Virus record (IMG/VR): IMGVR_UViG_3300031787_007614
Coordinates: 300,405-364,404 of that record
Direction: 5' to 3' (one strand)
DNA: 64,000 bases
Positions 55,610 through 64,000 of the stretch are shown here, piece after piece. The stretch's first letter is position 1. Each line of letters starts with the position of its first letter. Made by a program: the position numbers and the translations under genes. A model generated the notes under the pieces. The model was not told the origin of the DNA and ran no database searches. It saw only the letters and a program-made list of their open reading frames with translations.

Positions 55610-56086
55610 TTAGGCAGCTCGTAAACTCTTAAATCTATCTGCCGCGTATGATGCTGCAAATGCTTCTGGCTTCACAAACGGAATCACATTGCATGTTCCT
55701 TTGATGTAGCCCACAGCTTGCGAGATCACACAACTTGAACCGTATTGTTCGTCTGGGTTGATGTCCAAGTGAACTTCAACTTGACGGCCTTCTAGTACGT
55801 CAGCCAGTTTCAAATACAGTTCTGAAACCTTGTACACTTCGGTCATCAAACGCATGGCAGGTTTGCCTGGTTTCACGTCCCACACACGCTCGCGTTGAAC
55901 TTCGCCAAACAGTTTGCAGCCGTTGTTGCCGTTGATGTGTACCACAATGGCCAACACATAGTCGGCATACCAGGTACCGTCAATTTTGATTCGTTCAGAG
56001 TCGCAGCCAAGGTAGATGCGAGTTTCGGGCGTTTGTTTCTGGATAAATTCTGCTACTGATGCTATATCGAGCTTTTTCATTTTCAA
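55610..56086 (-). CDS. RNase H-like YkuK/DUF458 family protein
   Basis: IYLGCDS, RL..EV..., EVHLDIN, KPEAFAASYAAD. Confidence 0.8.
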   Translation of the reverse strand: MKMKKLDIASVAEFIQKQTPETRIYLGCDSERIKIDGTWYADYVLAIVVHINGNNGCKLFGEVQRERVWDVKPGKPAMRLMTEVYKVSELYLKLADVLEGRQVEVHLDINPDEQYGSSCVISQAVGYIKGTCNVIPFVKPEAFAASYAADRFKSLRAA

Positions 56087-56192: not shown

Positions 56193-56227
56193 AAAAAAAA
56201 AAACAGTAGGACTGGCCTACTGTTTTT
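56193..56227. terminator. Bidirectional intrinsic terminator
   Basis: A11-CAGTAGG-actgg-CCTACTG-T5. Confidence 0.8.
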
Positions 56228-56576: not shown

Positions 56577-57350
56577 TTATTGCTTTGCGGCAATCACGCT
56601 TAAATGCCAACCTAGCTGTTGATTGACAGCCTGGCGTTGTGCATCGCTCATGGCAGCAAACCATGGTTCCAACACATAATTTCCTTGTTTGTACTGCTCT
56701 ACATTGTACATAAAACAGTAATCTTGCTTGATGCTTTTGATATCAAAGTGTACGTCCAGCAGTTTTTGTATTTCTCCTTGACTGTAAACTCTGGCATATG
56801 GGCAGTTGTCTTGCGCTTCAAACTGGTCCAGCCCAGACTGAATCATTGCCCATTTCCAACTGTTGCGAGCATACACTAGGAAACGAAACTCCCCATCAGA
56901 TGCTAGACTTGCGTAAGCATTGCTGACCACTTGTTCTACATTGGGATAGTGATGCAATACACCACAAGCATACACCATATCAAATTGTCCTAGCCCTGCA
57001 ACACGCTGACTGTCGCCTGCGTCCATGTGATAGAATTCAGCATCTAATCCCATAACAGTAAATCTCTGCTCACAAAGTTCTATGCTACGACTGCTAAGAT
57101 CAATCCCAACGTATTCAGCACCATGCCGTACAAATTGTTCAGCATCAGATCCAATGCCGCATCCTAGTTCTAGCACCCGCCGTCCCTTGCAGTTTTCAAA
57201 GTCGGCCAACTGCCACAAATGCGGCCCAACAAACCATCTACGACGATTGATGTTGTTCCAAAATTCTTCTGTGCCTTCTGGTGCCAACCCATGCTTTATA
57301 TTACAAGGTTGTTGATCCCAGTACTGTTCTATTTGAGTAATTGTAGCCAT
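56577..57350 (-). CDS. Class I SAM-dependent methyltransferase
   Basis: VLELGCGIGSD, GIDLS, FDMVYACGVLHH. Confidence 0.9.
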   Translation of the reverse strand: MATITQIEQYWDQQPCNIKHGLAPEGTEEFWNNINRRRWFVGPHLWQLADFENCKGRRVLELGCGIGSDAEQFVRHGAEYVGIDLSSRSIELCEQRFTVMGLDAEFYHMDAGDSQRVAGLGQFDMVYACGVLHHYPNVEQVVSNAYASLASDGEFRFLVYARNSWKWAMIQSGLDQFEAQDNCPYARVYSQGEIQKLLDVHFDIKSIKQDYCFMYNVEQYKQGNYVLEPWFAAMSDAQRQAVNQQLGWHLSVIAAKQ

Positions 57351-58292: not shown

Positions 58293-58511
58293 TTATTTTA
58301 CTTTGGGTTCTTGACTTTTGTCAAGTTCATGGGGTTCAGCAAATCTTGTGCCGTGGCCCAGATTCCAACTGTCTGCTGTGAAAATTTTTACAGGCTTCCA
58401 GTAACGACTTATGATGTTGTTGACAGCAACAGCCGCCGCCACAATCACTACAAATCCTATTGCTGTCAAAATACTACCAGCTAAGAATACAGCCGCTTGA
58501 TCCATGTCCAT
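58293..58511 (-). CDS. Small membrane protein
   Basis: One hydrophobic helix; fills the spacer between tRNA-Gly and tRNA-Pro. Confidence 0.6.
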   Translation of the reverse strand: MDMDQAAVFLAGSILTAIGFVVIVAAAVAVNNIISRYWKPVKIFTADSWNLGHGTRFAEPHELDKSQEPKVK

Positions 58512-58610: not shown

Positions 58611-58639
58611 ATTATACAACACTCAGACACTGTTGTAAA
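58611..58639 (-). promoter_or_regulatory. Internal sigma70 promoter TTTACA-17-TATAAT
   Basis: Read directly; just upstream of tRNA-Gly(UCC). Confidence 0.65.
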
Positions 58640-58892: not shown

Positions 58893-58984
58893 TGGTACCC
58901 CCACCGGGAGTCGAACCCAGATGAACCAATTATCTGTTGCTTACGGGATATAAATCCGCCGTTTTACCATTAAACTATAGGGGC
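58893..58984 (-). tRNA. tRNA-Ile(UAU)-like with 22-nt variable arm
   Basis: Loop TT TAT AT, A31-C39 mismatch, canonical T-arm, CCA; 92 nt. Confidence 0.7.
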
Positions 58985-59288: not shown

Positions 59289-60413
59289 ATGAACAAATAT
59301 TGTCCAAAACCATTTGTTAGTATTCATATGTATACTGATAAAGATCTCAATCCAACTGTTAGGCCTTGTTGCAATTACAAACCTATCAAGCAGTACGCAA
59401 CGATTAATGATTATTTGCAATCATCTGAACTAGCGTCTCTTCAGCAACATTTGCTTACAAAAGAATCATTGCCAGATGGATGCAAGGCATGCAAAGTAGA
59501 CGAAGATAATAACTTGCCTAGTATCCGAAACAAGTATATTAAAGTGTTTGAGCATGAAACCAAAACTAAAATTGTTGACTTGGAAATTTTCCCTGGCAAC
59601 GCATGTAATCTCAGTTGCTTGTCGTGCAATCCTTCTCATAGTACCAAATCAGGTCAGGAATATGCCAAACTTGGATGGATTAAACAATCAATAGTGATCA
59701 ATCACGAAGATCATGCACTTGAAGTTATTAAACAGTTGCCAGACCTTAAATCAATAGGTTTTATTGGCGGCGAATTTTTTGTAACCAAACACAATATTGA
59801 ATTGCTCGATGCGGTTATTGAAAAAAATCTTAAAACACGAATTATTACCAATGCCACTCAACTAACCAAAAAACATCTTGAGCGGTTACAAAAAATATCT
59901 GACCTTGATGTGATGGTTAGTGTAGACGGTACTGGGCCAACATTTGAATTTTTACGCTATCCGGCACAATGGTCAGTTGTGCAATCAAACATTGTTGCAC
60001 TACAACAGGCATTGCCCGGAGCAAAGATACATTTGTCGGCAGTGTTGCAATTTTTAAATTTGCAAAATATCATTGAACTGTTTGAATACGCCAATGTCCG
60101 TCGACTGCCATTTAATGTGATCCCTTTATCTTATCCTGTTTGGCTACAGTCAGAAGTGCTTACCACTCTCGAACGTCAGCAGTTGATTGCAGTTATACAA
60201 AAACAACTAACAGTTGCAAAACTTACCAAAACACAAAAACAGTTAATGACTGATACATGTAGTATGCTAGAAACAATACAGCACTCACCTGCTCAACGAG
60301 AACAGTTTGTGTCTCGAACAAGCCAGCTGATTCGACTGCGCAACATCACACAACACACAATCAACTCAGTGTTTGGTGTGCTAGAAAATTTAGCGCAAGA
60401 AGTTATACAATAG
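59289..60413 (+). CDS. Twitch/SPASM-domain radical SAM protein inserted in the tRNA array
   Basis: CNLSCLSC, GGEF, N-terminal PCC and CKAC; TAAGTA 5 nt upstream. Confidence 0.85.
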   Translation: MNKYCPKPFVSIHMYTDKDLNPTVRPCCNYKPIKQYATINDYLQSSELASLQQHLLTKESLPDGCKACKVDEDNNLPSIRNKYIKVFEHETKTKIVDLEIFPGNACNLSCLSCNPSHSTKSGQEYAKLGWIKQSIVINHEDHALEVIKQLPDLKSIGFIGGEFFVTKHNIELLDAVIEKNLKTRIITNATQLTKKHLERLQKISDLDVMVSVDGTGPTFEFLRYPAQWSVVQSNIVALQQALPGAKIHLSAVLQFLNLQNIIELFEYANVRRLPFNVIPLSYPVWLQSEVLTTLERQQLIAVIQKQLTVAKLTKTQKQLMTDTCSMLETIQHSPAQREQFVSRTSQLIRLRNITQHTINSVFGVLENLAQEVIQ

Positions 60414-61033: not shown

Positions 61034-61126
61034 TGGTGGAGCAACTTGGAGTCGAACCAAGAATGTTTACCACGAGGGGACGGATTTACAGTCCGCCGAT
61101 GCACACGCCATAGCATCAATTGCTCC
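61034..61126 (-). tRNA. tRNA-Tyr(GUA) with extended D-arm
   Basis: GCGGA-CT GTA AA-TCCGT; D stem GATGC/GCATC; 18-nt V region. Confidence 0.85.
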
Positions 61127-61212: not shown

Positions 61213-61286
61213 TGGCATCCCGGGAGGGACTCGAACCCCCACGAACGGTTTTGGAGACCGTCATGCTGCCATTACACCACCGAGAC
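61213..61286 (-). tRNA. tRNA-Trp(CCA)
   Basis: ACGGT-CT CCA AA-ACCGT; G73. Confidence 0.93.
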
Positions 61287-61294
61287 ATAATTTT

Positions 61295-61370
61295 AACACA
61301 CTCTTGCGAATGTGTGTATTAAAACATTCTAAACTACTTAGGCTGCCTGTTTGTAAAGAATGTTTTAATA
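61295..61370 (-). ncRNA. Closing-stem elements B and C (tandem)
   Basis: ACACAUUC-GCAA-GAGUGUGU hairpin, and a perfect 14-bp inverted repeat UAUUAAAACAUUCU/AGAAUGUUUUAAUA. Confidence 0.55.
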
Positions 61371-61468
61371 CGCTCGGATTTTTTTATGTACAAGAACATA
61401 AGCCATCCCCGAGGCCGCCCATTTGTAGTTTAGAGTGATACAGGCTCGCGTTGCCGTTGCACTAAATG

Positions 61469-61496
61469 AAAAAACCCAGGGTTTTTACGCCTGGGT
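61469..61496 (-). terminator. Attenuator terminator
   Basis: ACCCAGG-9nt-CCUGGGU followed by U5. Confidence 0.8.
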
Positions 61497-61524
61497 CCTT
61501 GGGTAAGATACGGTTGTATACTAC

Positions 61525-61632
61525 TTAGGACCCTCTGCCTCCTGGAATGCTATTCATGCGACCATAGGCGTGTGACCAAACTGGTGTCTGGGCAAACTTG
61601 GGTAGCAGTGAACAATATTGTGTTTTCATCAT
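61525..61632 (-). CDS. Putative 35-aa leader peptide (leaderless)
   Basis: MMKTQYCSLLPKFAQTPVWSHAYGRMNSIPGGRGS*; the stop codon overlaps the antiterminator 5' strand. Confidence 0.6.
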   Translation of the reverse strand: MMKTQYCSLLPKFAQTPVWSHAYGRMNSIPGGRGS

Positions 61633-61639
61633 AAGTCCT

Positions 61640-61668
61640 ATTGTACAGTATTTACCTTTTGAGGTCAA
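61640..61668 (-). promoter_or_regulatory. sigma70 promoter TTGACC-17-TACAAT (nested TAAATA in spacer)
   Basis: Read directly; the -10 lies 7 nt before the leader ATG. Confidence 0.85.
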
Positions 61669-61704: not shown

Positions 61705-61779
61705 TGGTTGCGGGGGAAGGAATCGAACCTCCGTCTCCCAGGTTATGAGCCTGGTGGTCTACCGCTGACGTACCCCGCG
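61705..61779 (-). tRNA. tRNA-fMet(CAU)
   Basis: C1-A72 mismatch; CT CAT AA; CCA. Confidence 0.9.
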
Positions 61780-61790
61780 ATTGAATTATT

Positions 61791-61872
61791 TATATAGAAA
61801 CACACTCTATGCTTGGGGAACAATTCATTGAATTGAGCAACCACCAACGGGTACGGAGTGCGTTTGTATATA
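61791..61872 (-). ncRNA. Closing-stem spacer element D
   Basis: 17-nt arms UAUAUACAAACGCACUC / GAGUGUGUUUCUAUAUA. Confidence 0.55.
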
Positions 61873-61875
61873 AAG

Positions 61876-62774
61876 TGGCGGACTGAGAATACATCCTAAC
61901 CCAGTAACACCTCGGACATTATTACAAACCTTGCGAGTCTGCTTTCTTCCGATTTCCACTGCAACCATATTGCTATGTATCACAGTCTGTTACCAGTATC
62001 GCCGTTTTTAAAGACAGGCAGTAGTCTTGTCATCACATGCTACTCTACACCATCTATCCCGTTGACCTTTAGAGCCATTCACTGTCGCTAAACAGTTACG
62101 AAACTTCCAGTATAAACAGATTTCACCTTGCGAGTTACGTCTGACTGTATTGCCTTGCGGCTACAGCATTAGATACTTTTCACACATGACCGAGTCAGTC
62201 TTTGCTTTTATGTTAGATAGTGGTTTTGAAGCCACAGCCTATTCCTTAACAGGGAATTGCTCTACGATGAGCTATATCAACCTACTGCGATGTGCTGACT
62301 CAGTTGCTTCATACTCTTTTGGAATACAAAATACAACACACCACGTTCCTTTTGTCTTGCGAACTACTCAGACGTCTTTTGCGATCAGTGTCGGGTCTCG
62401 GCTTTCGCGTACCTCCACCAACCACTCAAACTGCATACGAGCCCTTGGGTGCAACCCCTCGGACCGATACGCTACCCTTTCTCATACCAATTAACTGGGC
62501 TGGTTTTGTATAGAAGTCAGCACCACCTGTTACTTTTCTGCAACTCCGGTTACCCTTGCGGGCCGGTAAGTTACAGCTCTTTCCTATACTCCCAGCGTCA
62601 TTGTTACAACCACCGGTCTTATCAGTGATCGGATCCTCACGGACCTGAGCAGGCTTGTTTACATGAACCATTGCTGGCGGACTTATGTAGGCATACATCC
62701 TTTGGCTGGGTCACCCCAGTTATTCTTCGTACAGCTGGGCGAACCATACTGCACAGGACAATAAACTGCCCTAT
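61876..62774 (-). ncRNA. ~900-nt highly structured ncRNA, GOLLD-like candidate
   Basis: Own consensus promoter, many GCAA/GAAA tetraloop hairpins on the minus strand, long-range complementarities, no credible ORF, heads a phage tRNA array. Confidence 0.65.
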
Positions 62775-62780
62775 GTATCT

Positions 62781-62809
62781 ATTGTAAGACAAACGTCTTT
62801 TGTTGTCAA
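62781..62809 (-). promoter_or_regulatory. sigma70 promoter TTGACA-17-TACAAT
   Basis: Read directly. Confidence 0.9.
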
Positions 62810-63872: not shown

Positions 63873-64000
63873 ATTCTATAGTCAAGCACCGAGAGATGCT
63901 CAATTTATGCGTCCTCCGCTAAGAGTGCAATAGCCGATAGCAGTTATATTAGGATCCGTTCCCGGCCGGTTGGACCCGAATAGCGTAAGCGTCCTTACAC

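What the first reader, a model, noticed from the sequence alone, without database searches (positions are those of the whole stretch)
61469..61668. Leader-peptide attenuator controlling the phage tRNA operon: a possible pan-amino-acid sensor
Seen directly: a consensus promoter; a 35-codon ORF starting at about +1; GGGUCCU (61527-61533, overlapping the stop codon) complementary to AGGACCC (61493-61499), which overlaps the 5' arm of a U-tailed terminator, giving mutually exclusive hairpins; then 24 tRNA genes downstream (with an internal promoter and terminator further on). This is the classic ribosomal attenuation layout, where a stalled ribosome allows read-through. The peptide contains 18 amino acids and lacks only Asp and Glu, the two with no tRNA in the array (counting the CAU tRNA as Met). 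Inference: the phage raises tRNA output when translation of any covered codon slows, for example under host anticodon-nuclease attack or starvation. Caveat: about 17 distinct residues are expected in 35 random codons, so the D/E match could be chance.
Basis: partly seen in the sequence, partly recalled or inferred. Interest (0 to 1): 0.82.

Follow-up and report, generated by a model that had tools for sequence, protein, structure and literature searches.

The report
Leaderless leader-peptide attenuator before phage tRNAs
A freshwater giant phage, and many of its relatives, carry a conserved promoter, a tiny translated reading frame and a terminator/antiterminator RNA switch just upstream of a structured RNA and a tRNA gene cluster, so output of the phage's tRNAs probably depends on how well ribosomes are translating; the claimed match between the peptide's amino acids and the tRNA set is a coincidence.

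Summary
The sequence features are real and lie at the stated coordinates on the minus strand. They are a sigma-70 promoter (61668-61640), a 35-codon ORF starting 7 nt after the -10 (61632-61525), GGGUCCU/AGGACCC pairing, and a U-tailed terminator (61496-61469). Twenty distinct relatives from viral and metagenome contigs keep all of them. The ORF stays open in only one frame, and all its indels are multiples of three. The -10-N7-ATG spacing is fixed. Terminator pairs covary. The antiterminator is always an extended hairpin (z -2.9 to -7.3) that is more stable than the terminator, and it always contains the stop codon. A conserved structured RNA follows the terminator with no room for a promoter, so read-through must occur. 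This supports a ribosome-dependent transcription attenuator. First, the element is not at the head of the tRNA genes: GOLLD RNA, an initiator-like tRNA-Met, tRNA-Asp/Glu and a tmRNA lie upstream. Second, the "18 amino acids, no Asp/Glu" match is not conserved. Most homologous peptides contain Asp or Glu, and their amino-acid diversity is ordinary. Instead the peptide has a conserved core, W-S...N-S-I-P-G, which may be regulatory codons or an arrest motif. No transcription or translation data settle the mechanism.

The parts
61640..61668 (-). Sigma-70-type promoter: -35 TTGACC (61668-61663), 17-nt spacer, -10 TACAAT (61645-61640).
   Evidence: 10 of 12 matches. In relatives, TTGAC is invariant, the spacer sequence varies at a fixed length of 17, and the -10 toggles between TACAAT and TATAAT.
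61525..61632 (-). Leaderless 35-codon leader ORF (MMKTQYCSLLPKFAQTPVWSHAYGRMNSIPGGRGS, stop TAA 61527-61525). The ATG lies 7 nt after the -10.
   Evidence: In 17-19 distinct homologues the ORF is open only in this frame. All ORF indels are multiples of three. The -10-N7-ATG spacing is kept even where no AGGA is present (L043/L044). L042 has a 46-nt leader plus an SD instead. Seventeen 50%-identity clusters of such peptides exist in 1.84 billion proteins.
61540..61578 (-). Conserved peptide core: W19-S20 (61578-61573) and N27-S-I-P-G31 (61554-61540).
   Evidence: W, S, N, S, I, P and G are conserved in 17-19 of 19 homologues, with synonymous variation at S, S, P and G. AAT and ATT are invariant. 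pN/pS elsewhere is 0.4-1.1.
61493..61533 (-). Antiterminator hairpin: 5' strand GGGUCCU (61533-61527, last two sense codons plus the first stop base), inner stems, 3' strand AGGACCC (61499-61493).
   Evidence: -17.5 kcal/mol, z -3.3; relatives -16 to -30, z to -7.3. The core GGGUC/GACCC is invariant whatever the reading frame (L020/L029). The flanking pair changes C-G to U-A in two lineages and to U-G in one.
61469..61496 (-). Intrinsic terminator: ACCCAGG (61496-61490), 9-nt loop, CCUGGGU (61480-61474), U-run to 61469. It shares ACCC (61496-61493) with the antiterminator.
   Evidence: It is 100% paired in 20 sequences, with pair types AU/UA/CG/UG at one position and further covarying pairs. 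Energy is -14.9 kcal/mol.
61296..61462 (-). Conserved structured RNA ('RNA X') between the terminator and the first tRNA. Helices: P1/P1a (loop AACGCGA), P2, P3 (16 bp), P4 (GCAA tetraloop).
   Evidence: There are 34 pairs, 98.9% paired, 12 pairs with compensatory changes, and 0 of 500 shuffles reach the observed value. No Rfam match.
61213..61286 (-). tRNA-Trp(CCA), the first gene of the downstream tRNA cluster (Trp, Ala, Tyr, Asn, Ser, Thr, Arg ...).
   Evidence: In relatives, Trp or Ala is usually the first tRNA after the leader.
61705..61779 (-). Upstream neighbour: tRNA-Met(CAU) with a C1xA72 acceptor end (initiator-like), 73 nt before the leader ATG.
   Evidence: non-canonical first pair. 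It is present 73-276 nt upstream of the leader ATG in most relatives.

Best explanation
This is a conserved, ribosome-dependent transcription attenuator.

Proposed mechanism:
1. A sigma-70 promoter starts an mRNA at, or within 1-2 nt of, the AUG of a 35-45-codon leader ORF, so the mRNA is leaderless.
2. The RNA behind the ORF can fold in two ways. One is a long three-tier hairpin, the antiterminator, whose 5' half is the end of the ORF and contains the stop codon. The other is a shorter hairpin plus U-tract, the terminator, which reuses ACCC(N) from the 3' strand of the first.
3. Without a ribosome, the antiterminator is the more stable fold. RNA polymerase then reads on into a conserved structured RNA and the tRNA-Trp/Ala... 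cluster.
4. A ribosome that has kept pace with the polymerase unwinds or occupies the 5' half of the antiterminator. The shared segment then folds into the terminator and transcription stops.
5. Slow or failed translation of the leader therefore raises read-through. The cause could be too little charged tRNA, poor initiation, or a programmed arrest at the conserved W-S...N-S-I-P-G core. That core ends 7 nt (6 in some relatives) before the antiterminator strand.

Shown: the anatomy, its conservation, the coding constraint, covariation, and the energetics.
Inferred: the start site, that the ribosome decides the fold, the direction of regulation, and what is sensed.
For: - Promoter conserved in the way promoters are.
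- ATG exactly 7 nt after the -10 in all relatives but one. Two relatives (L043, L044) have no SD-like AGGA at all. The exception, L042, has a 46-nt leader and has acquired AAGGA-N6-ATG.
- ORF open only in frame 0 in all distinct homologues, and at least 7 indel events are all multiples of three. In flanking non-coding DNA 3 of 13 indels are.
- Conserved residues show synonymous variation.
- Terminator 100% paired with 4 pair types at one position (alifold).
- Antiterminator register gives 92% paired against 58% or less when slid. C-G changes to U-A in two lineages. A G/C co-insertion occurs in all three strands in L017/L021.
- The antiterminator hairpin folds as one stem-loop in 12 diverse variants (z -2.9 to -7.3). 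It is always more stable than the terminator (-16 to -29 against -13 to -19 kcal/mol).
- RNA X starts about 6 nt after the U-tract and shows strong RNA-level covariation. It must therefore be transcribed through the terminator.
- Synteny leader-RNA X-tRNAs holds in every relative with enough sequence.
- Metatranscriptome contig depth rises across the promoter (X15: 0.02, 2.2, 10.5). It falls after the terminator in one run (X7: 39 to 9.5) and stays flat in another (X15). This fits partial termination only loosely.
Against: - There are no direct data on the start site, translation or termination. The RNA evidence is assembler contigs at very low depth, possibly from relatives or DNA.
- There is no run of regulatory codons as in classical attenuators.
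- No clear pause hairpin exists to synchronise ribosome and polymerase. The small CCAG...CUGG hairpin in the ORF is only weakly supported.
- Leaderless initiation is inefficient in many bacteria, which could make read-through constitutive.
- The antiterminator core (5 bp) never varies, so covariation support rests on flanking pairs and on the distal stems.
- In long-tailed variants the base-helix 5' strand is outside the footprint of a ribosome sitting at the stop codon. The argument there is energetic rather than simple masking.
- Strong promoter-like sites inside the array (58639-58611, 58324-58295) limit what the switch can control.
Confidence: 0.68

Rival explanations
1. Nascent-peptide arrest sensor. 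This is a sub-variant of the attenuator. The conserved W-S...N-S-I-P-G peptide stalls the ribosome from inside the exit tunnel, possibly in response to a ligand or factor, as TnaC, SpeFL, SecM or Erm leaders do. The stalled position, a fixed 6-7 nt before the antiterminator strand, sets the RNA fold. It would not be a general read-out of aminoacyl-tRNA supply.
For: Selection acts at the peptide level on about 9 residues with synonymous codon variation, while the rest of the peptide drifts (pN/pS 0.4-1.1). The distance from the NSIPG codons to GGGUCC is nearly constant, while the stop codon moves by 0-8 codons. Peptide length (35-45 aa) is like SpeFL and TnaC (my knowledge).
Against: There is no similarity to any known arrest motif or family. 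AAU and AUU never change to AAC/AUC, which could equally point to codon-level or RNA-level constraint. No stalling data exist.
Confidence: 0.25
2. A stand-alone micro-protein (or dual-function small RNA) gene with its own promoter and terminator. The 35-45-aa product acts in trans, for example with GOLLD, tRNAs or ribosomes. Downstream RNA X and the tRNAs would be made by unregulated leak-through or by another promoter.
For: The peptide motif is conserved and the family is widespread. Leader peptides and terminated attenuator RNAs with trans functions are known (peTrpL/rnTrpL, PMC7298713, PMC6614838). Weak promoter-like matches exist just before tRNA-Trp (61318-61290).
Against: An ordinary gene terminator would not be undercut in every lineage by a stronger, conserved hairpin that shares 4-9 nt with it and contains the stop codon. 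The -10-like element before tRNA-Trp is not conserved, and its -35 lies in a covarying RNA helix. RNA X abuts the U-tract. Most of the peptide is weakly constrained.
Confidence: 0.12
3. The terminator/antiterminator switch is set by a trans-acting factor rather than by the ribosome. Candidates are a phage or host RNA-binding protein, an uncharged tRNA in the manner of a T-box, or a small molecule. The ORF would be translated but incidental.
For: Many attenuators are protein- or RNA-controlled (PMC12591593). The invariant GGGUC/GACCC and the conserved nucleotides around it could be a binding site. tRNA genes are the cargo, so tRNA sensing would make sense.
Against: There is no T-box or other Rfam match in the window or in five relatives at permissive thresholds. 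The distal part of the hairpin, where a ligand pocket would sit, is not conserved in sequence. The conserved ORF always ends inside the hairpin and keeps its start signals, which a ribosome-independent switch would not need.
Confidence: 0.08
4. Chance: a spacer that happens to contain a promoter-like site, an open frame and a hairpin.
For: Taken alone, each single-sequence feature is only mildly unlikely.
Against: All features are conserved with covariation and frame preservation in 20 distinct relatives at 50-90% identity.
Confidence: 0.01

Closest known systems
Ribosome-mediated attenuators of amino-acid operons (E. coli trp, his, leu, thr, ilv, pheA leaders)
   Same: A short leader ORF, an intrinsic terminator, a competing antiterminator that shares a segment with it, and a ribosome reaching the end of the ORF that favours the terminator.
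   Different: The cargo is a structured RNA plus tRNA genes in a phage, not biosynthetic enzymes. There is no run of cognate codons and no region-1/pause hairpin that I could support. The mRNA is leaderless. The peptide has a conserved sequence core.
Leaderless leader peptides of Corynebacterium glutamicum attenuators (trp, ilvBNC, leuA; PMC3890552, PMC11857589)
   Same: The leader peptide is translated from a transcript that starts at its start codon, followed by terminator/antiterminator hairpins.
   Different: Those are actinobacterial amino-acid operons with cognate codon runs. The host here is probably proteobacterial (beta-type permuted tmRNA in relatives), and the target is tRNA genes.
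Nascent-peptide sensors TnaC, SpeFL, SecM and Erm leaders
   Same: A short upstream ORF with a conserved residue pattern, acting in cis on downstream expression.
   Different: Those act through Rho access or SD exposure, and their arrest is experimentally shown. Here an intrinsic terminator is involved and arrest is only conjecture. There is no sequence similarity.
T-box riboswitches
   Same: Terminator/antiterminator control tied to the state of tRNAs.
   Different: T-boxes bind uncharged tRNA directly, have no ORF, and control synthetase and transporter genes. No T-box match was found here.
pyrBI attenuator
   Same: The outcome depends on how closely the ribosome follows RNA polymerase.
   Different: In pyrBI a close ribosome prevents the terminator. 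Here a close ribosome is predicted to favour it.
Sinorhizobium rnTrpL / peTrpL
   Same: Shows that a terminated attenuator RNA and its leader peptide can have functions of their own, a possibility for the conserved peptide here.
   Different: No evidence for trans action here.

Membership tests
Ribosome-mediated (leader-peptide) transcription attenuator | Short ORF with working start signals at the 5' end of the transcript | tested here: met
   ATG lies 7 nt after a conserved -10 in 19 of 20 variants. L042 has an SD plus ATG instead. The ORF is open only in this frame and all indels are multiples of three.
Ribosome-mediated (leader-peptide) transcription attenuator | Intrinsic terminator between the leader ORF and the regulated genes | tested here: met
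   A 7-8 bp GC-rich stem plus U-run, 100% paired in 20 sequences with covariation.
Ribosome-mediated (leader-peptide) transcription attenuator | Alternative antiterminator that shares nucleotides with the terminator's 5' arm | tested here: met
   Overlap of 4-9 nt in all variants. The antiterminator hairpin is always more stable, z to -7.3. Flanking pairs covary.
Ribosome-mediated (leader-peptide) transcription attenuator | ORF end placed so that a terminating ribosome disrupts the antiterminator | tested here: met
   The 5' strand lies inside the ORF in all variants. The stop codon sits directly after the base helix or in the apical loop, and 19-31 nt before the 3' strand.
Ribosome-mediated (leader-peptide) transcription attenuator | Tandem regulatory codons for the sensed amino acid | tested here: not met
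   No codon run. Composition and diversity are ordinary. Only single conserved W, S, N, S, I, P, G codons are present.
Ribosome-mediated (leader-peptide) transcription attenuator | Pause or anti-antiterminator element (region 1) that synchronises ribosome and polymerase | tested here: inconclusive
   AGGACUU:GGGUC pairing was suggested by alifold but is not kept in L038-L044. The small CCAG..CUGG hairpin shows only partial covariation.
Ribosome-mediated (leader-peptide) transcription attenuator | Read-through changes with leader translation | not testable with these tools
   Only assembled metatranscriptome contigs at depth up to 39 were available.
Leaderless mRNA | Transcription start at or within a few nt of the start codon | tested here: inconclusive
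   The conserved -10-N7-ATG geometry, including variants without any SD, argues for it. No 5'-end data exist. Depth rises across the promoter in two runs.
Nascent-peptide arrest sensors (TnaC/SpeFL/SecM type) | Conserved peptide residues under amino-acid-level selection | tested here: met
   W, S, N, S, I, P, G are conserved with synonymous codon changes.
Nascent-peptide arrest sensors (TnaC/SpeFL/SecM type) | Demonstrated ribosome arrest, or similarity to a known arrest motif | tested here: not met
   No Pfam or Atlas relative. Arrest itself is not testable here.
T-box riboswitch | Stem I/specifier and T-box sequence in the antiterminator | tested here: not met
   No Rfam hit at E up to 10 in the window, or up to 0.1 in five relatives.
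GOLLD RNA (upstream neighbour, RF02032) | Score above Rfam's gathering threshold over the full model | tested here: met
   204 bits against 150, model 1-416, E 5e-57; 198-209 bits in L011 and L041.

The most novel reading that the evidence does not exclude
The element is an autoregulatory gauge of translational capacity for a phage-borne translation kit. The leaderless ORF sits directly behind the phage's own initiator-like tRNA-Met. It is translated with conserved single codons (UGG, UCA, AAU, AGY, AUU, CCA), and the tRNAs that decode them sit at the head of the downstream cluster. In relative L041 the first six tRNAs are exactly these decoders. When host or phage tRNAs for these codons, or initiation on the leaderless mRNA, become limiting, the ribosome lags. 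Limitation could come from host shut-off or anticodon nucleases. The antiterminator then forms and the phage makes more RNA X and tRNAs. Alternatively, the W...NSIPG peptide is a new ligand-responsive arrest peptide.
Probability: 0.3. Interest if true: 0.9.

Novelty: new variant of a known kind. Interest (0 to 1): 0.76.

Why it matters
Phage tRNA arrays are common, but how their expression is controlled is largely unknown. In the literature I could search I found no report of a leader-peptide attenuator in front of tRNA genes, in phages or in cells.

If the mechanism holds, a virus couples production of its own tRNAs, and of an unknown structured RNA, to the performance of the ribosomes it depends on. 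That would be a feedback loop relevant to host shut-off, codon-usage mismatch and tRNA-targeting defences.

The element is compact (about 200 nt) and uses a sigma-70 promoter, so it could be tested in vitro or in E. coli without culturing the phage. It also adds two conserved, unannotated elements next to GOLLD RNA, whose function is an open question: the leader peptide family and RNA X.

Tried and rejected
1. D/E coincidence and 'pan-amino-acid' composition. Rejected: homologues contain D/E, diversity is ordinary, and AGA has no cognate phage tRNA.
2. AGGACUU before the AUG as an anti-antiterminator (region 1) for transcripts coming from GOLLD/tRNA-Met. Alifold suggested it, but that stretch was fixed by my search pattern. 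Independently found relatives have AGGAAAC, AGGACAC or TGATACT. Dropped.
3. A second promoter just before tRNA-Trp (61318-61290). Its -35 lies in a covarying RNA helix and its -10 is not conserved. A weak promoter cannot be excluded.
4. The terminator as merely the end of the GOLLD-tRNA-Met unit. This is possible as an additional role, but it does not explain the conserved promoter, ORF and antiterminator.
5. Known RNA families for the leader or RNA X: none.
6. Known protein families for the peptide: none.
7. GenBank phages: only tRNA-level hits for the region. The nearest protein relative of the array's methyltransferase is 40% identical.
8. The four IMG/VR copies of the phage are 100% identical, so useless for covariation.
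9. MAFFT alignments of the switch region are out of structural register. I therefore counted pairs with anchored scripts rather than with the count of structure pairs.
10. Metatranscriptome contigs: informative for GOLLD, too thin for the leader.
11. Enrichment of decoders of the conserved codons among the proximal tRNAs: striking in L041, weak in the window. Left as unexplained.

Full report
**What is in the window**

All 25 ARAGORN tRNAs lie on the minus strand, so the finding must be read on that strand. Going 5' to 3', the layout is:

- A strong promoter-like site: 62809-62781, TTGACA-17-TACAAT.
- A GOLLD RNA. The Rfam hit covers 62344-61880 at 204 bits against a threshold of 150. Exact metatranscriptome contigs cover 62751-61885.
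- A tRNA-like insert inside GOLLD with anticodon GUU (62281-62211).
- A tRNA-Met(CAU) at 61779-61705. Its first acceptor pair is C1xA72, the mark of bacterial initiator tRNAs.
- A GNRA hairpin.

The element itself reads as follows:

- -35 TTGACC 61668-61663, a 17-nt spacer, -10 TACAAT 61645-61640.
- Seven nucleotides, then ATGATG at 61632.
- A 35-codon ORF ending in TAA at 61527-61525.
- GGGUCCU at 61533-61527, complementary to AGGACCC at 61499-61493.
- A terminator: ACCCAGG 61496-61490, a 9-nt loop, CCUGGGU 61480-61474, and a U-run to 61469.
- 24 tRNA genes downstream, starting with tRNA-Trp at 61286.

The statement that this heads the tRNA operon is not.

A longer contig of the same phage is 100% identical over the last 9 kb of the window. 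It shows tRNA-Asp, tRNA-Glu and a tmRNA a further 3-5 kb upstream on the same strand. The phage is a roughly 364-kb freshwater jumbo phage known only from metagenomes.

**Is it more than chance?**

In the single sequence, only mildly:

- The promoter scores 10 of 12. Such sites are no more frequent here than in shuffles.
- The 7-mer complement has roughly a 3% chance.
- The 170-nt transcript folds with z = -3.55.

The case rests on relatives. A diverged contig (L011) has GOLLD 91% identical, the spacer 70% and the radical-SAM gene 80% at the amino-acid level. It keeps every feature. An exact 20-mer from the -10/ATG region then found 2 further viral and 18 metagenome loci with tRNAs. Two other hits were chance.

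To escape the bias of that pattern, I searched a profile of the peptides against 1.84 billion representative proteins. It returned 17 short (35-44 aa) cluster representatives. I fetched seven loci (L038-L045) for six of them, together with their DNA. In all I had 20 distinct versions of the switch.

**Promoter and start**

- TTGAC of the -35 is invariant.
- The 17-nt spacer changes sequence but not length.
- The -10 alternates between TACAAT and TATAAT.
- The ATG lies exactly 7 nt after the -10 in 19 of 20 versions.
- In L043 and L044 those 7 nt are TGATACT, with no Shine-Dalgarno-like AGGA and a single ATG.
- In L042 a 46-nt insertion separates promoter and ORF, and there the ORF has AAGGA-N6-ATG.

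Start signals are thus maintained in two different ways. This argues that the ORF is translated and that the common form is leaderless. No 5'-end data exist.

**The ORF is under coding constraint**

- In every distinct homologue only this frame is open. The other two frames have 1-4 stops.
- At least seven indel events inside the ORF are all multiples of three, against 3 of 13 in the flanking non-coding alignment.
- Overall pN/pS is 0.4-1.1, so most of the peptide drifts as in regulatory leader peptides.
- A core is conserved: S8, W, S, then N-S-I-P-G and a G three residues later.
- Synonymous variation occurs at S (TCA/TCC), S (AGC/AGT), P (CCA/CCG) and G (four codons). AAT and ATT never change.
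- The C-terminus after G-[SP] varies from 0 to 10 residues.
- All stops are TAA.

**The RNA switch**

*Terminator.* All 20 sequences pair at all 7-8 positions. One position carries A-U, U-A, C-G and U-G, and two others carry two pair types each. Sliding the partner drops pairing from 100% to 71% or less.

*Antiterminator.*
- The core GGGUC/GACCC is invariant. It is kept as nucleotides even where it is read in another frame (CAG GGU CCG in L020/L029), so the constraint is on the RNA.
- The next inward pair is C-G in 11 sequences, U-A in three (two lineages) and U-G in one.
- In L017 and L021 an extra C in the shared segment is matched by an extra G in both the antiterminator 5' strand and the terminator 3' arm.
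- In-register pairing is 92%, against 58% or less when slid.
- The distal two-thirds of the hairpin differs completely in sequence between clades. Even so, it folds into the same three-tier stem-loop in all 12 variants tested (z -2.9 to -7.3).
- The antiterminator (-16 to -29 kcal/mol) is always more stable than the terminator (-13 to -19), and it is part of the full-length minimum-energy fold in 14 of 16 versions.
- The two structures share 4-9 nt.
- The stop codon lies directly after the base helix (short forms, including the window) or in the apical loop (long forms). It is 19-31 nt before the 3' strand.

**What lies behind the terminator**

Six nucleotides after the U-run begins a 167-nt conserved structured RNA (61462-61296). 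It has five helices and 34 pairs, of which 98.9% are paired. Twelve pairs show compensatory changes, 0 of 500 shuffles reach the observed values, and slid controls give 28-48%. It ends about 10 nt before tRNA-Trp and has no Rfam match.

Its RNA-level covariation shows that it is transcribed. There is no room for a promoter between the terminator and its first helix. The promoter-like match at 61318-61290 sits in a covarying helix, with a -10 that is not conserved. The terminator must therefore be read through at least some of the time, which is what an attenuator does.

**Mechanism, and how sure I am**

The simplest reading is classical ribosome-dependent attenuation without a region 1:

- With no ribosome, or a lagging one, the antiterminator forms as soon as it is transcribed, and the polymerase continues.
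- A ribosome that is translating or terminating inside the 5' half of the hairpin removes most of the antiterminator's stability. The local terminator then wins.
- Slower translation of the leader therefore gives more RNA X and more tRNAs.

This is inference from anatomy. I give it 0.68, including the variant in which the conserved peptide acts as an arrest sequence.

What is sensed is open. The conserved N-S-I-P codons sit 10-20 nt before the antiterminator strand. A stalled ribosome there would just leave that strand free, as with regulatory codons in trp. Alternatively, the W...NSIPG peptide could be an arrest motif.

Weak points:
- There is no codon run.
- There is no supported pause element.
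- Leaderless initiation may be inefficient.
- Promoter-like sites exist inside the array.
- There are no functional data.

The metatranscriptome contigs show GOLLD at depths of thousands to tens of thousands in the two largest runs (X7, X15), but the leader only at 2-39. There is a rise across the promoter and, in one run, a drop after the terminator. This is compatible with the model but not evidence for it.

**The 'pan-amino-acid sensor' claim**

- The window peptide does contain exactly the 18 amino acids whose tRNAs lie downstream.
- Eighteen kinds in 35 residues is ordinary (P 0.10-0.16). The exact set has P about 0.0002-0.001, but it was found post hoc.
- It is not conserved. Homologues lack C/D, E/Y, E/H/Y, C/E/Y or nothing at all.
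- Most carry D or E in their C-terminal tails (SIEGAGYA, SRGDKV, SFEGWDG), although tRNA-Asp/Glu sit upstream of the leader where the context is visible.
- L033 has Val in the peptide but ARAGORN finds no downstream tRNA-Val.
- AGA in the window peptide has no cognate phage tRNA.

I therefore treat the match as coincidence. A device of this design would still respond to slow decoding of any codon in its first 30 or so positions.

**Comparison with known systems**

- It works like the trp/his/leu class of attenuators and meets four of their structural criteria. It lacks the codon run.
- Leaderless leader peptides are known from Corynebacterium attenuators (PMC3890552).
- GOLLD next to phage tRNA islands, and tRNAs inside GOLLD, are known (bioRxiv 10.1101/2024.12.08.627333).
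- I found no report of a leader-peptide attenuator controlling tRNA genes, nor of this peptide family or RNA X.
- I rate it a new variant of a known kind.

Noticed in passing
window 61880-62751 (-), promoter-like site 62781-62809 (-): Full GOLLD RNA (Rfam 204 bits). A tRNA-like insert with anticodon GUU lies at 62211-62281; ARAGORN misses it here but calls it tRNA-Asn in L011. Relatives carry Lys or Thr tRNAs at that place. In two large freshwater metatranscriptomes its contig depth is 100 to more than 1000 times that of the flanks, falling to 0 at 61792-61878.
   Followed up: partly
window 61296-61462 (-): Unannotated conserved structured RNA ('RNA X') between the terminator and tRNA-Trp. It has five helices, 12 of 34 pairs with compensatory changes, a conserved hairpin loop AACGCGA (palindromic CGCG) and a GNRA-capped last helix. 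No Rfam match.
   Followed up: partly
window 61705-61779 (-): tRNA-Met(CAU) with a C1xA72 acceptor end like bacterial initiator tRNA. It sits directly upstream of a leaderless ORF that starts AUGAUG, and this neighbourhood is conserved in most relatives.
   Followed up: partly
L004 344-862, 2327-2401, 2605-2679 (same phage, beyond window position 64000): A phage-encoded tmRNA, tRNA-Glu(UUC) and tRNA-Asp(GUC). In relatives L017 and L044 the tmRNA scores as a permuted, betaproteobacterial-type tmRNA, a hint at the host group.
   Followed up: no
L041 3377-4024: In this relative the first six tRNAs after the leader are Ser-UGA, Ile-GAU, Trp-CCA, Pro-UGG, Ser-GCU and Asn-GUU. These are exactly the decoders of the conserved leader codons UCA, AUU, UGG, CCA, AGY and AAU. 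In the window only Trp, Asn and Ser-GCU are proximal.
   Followed up: partly
protein P0001 (224 aa): A predicted protein containing five tandem copies of a leader-peptide fragment (FQTPVWSRHYGHV). It may be a tandemly repeated leader region or an assembly artefact.
   Followed up: no
L042 1400-1460: One relative has a 46-nt insertion between the conserved -10 and the ORF. It has a canonical AAGGA-N6-ATG in place of the leaderless arrangement.
   Followed up: yes
window 59289-60413 (+), 56577-57350 (-), 55610-56086 (-): Protein genes interrupt the tRNA array. They are a radical-SAM protein on the opposite strand, a methyltransferase (phrog_22502; tRNA-methyltransferase-like; 40% identical to Synechococcus phage Bellamy) and a phrog_11311 protein.
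   Followed up: no
window 58893-58984 (-) and 61034-61126 (-): Unusually long tRNAs: tRNA-Ile(UAU) of 92 nt and tRNA-Tyr of 93 nt. The latter scores weakly as tRNA-Sec in Rfam.
   Followed up: no
window 56199-56227 (-); 58611-58639 (-); 58295-58324 (-): Inside the array there is a strong 12-bp terminator with a long T-run and two 11-of-12 promoter-like sites. The array is probably several transcription units.
   Followed up: no
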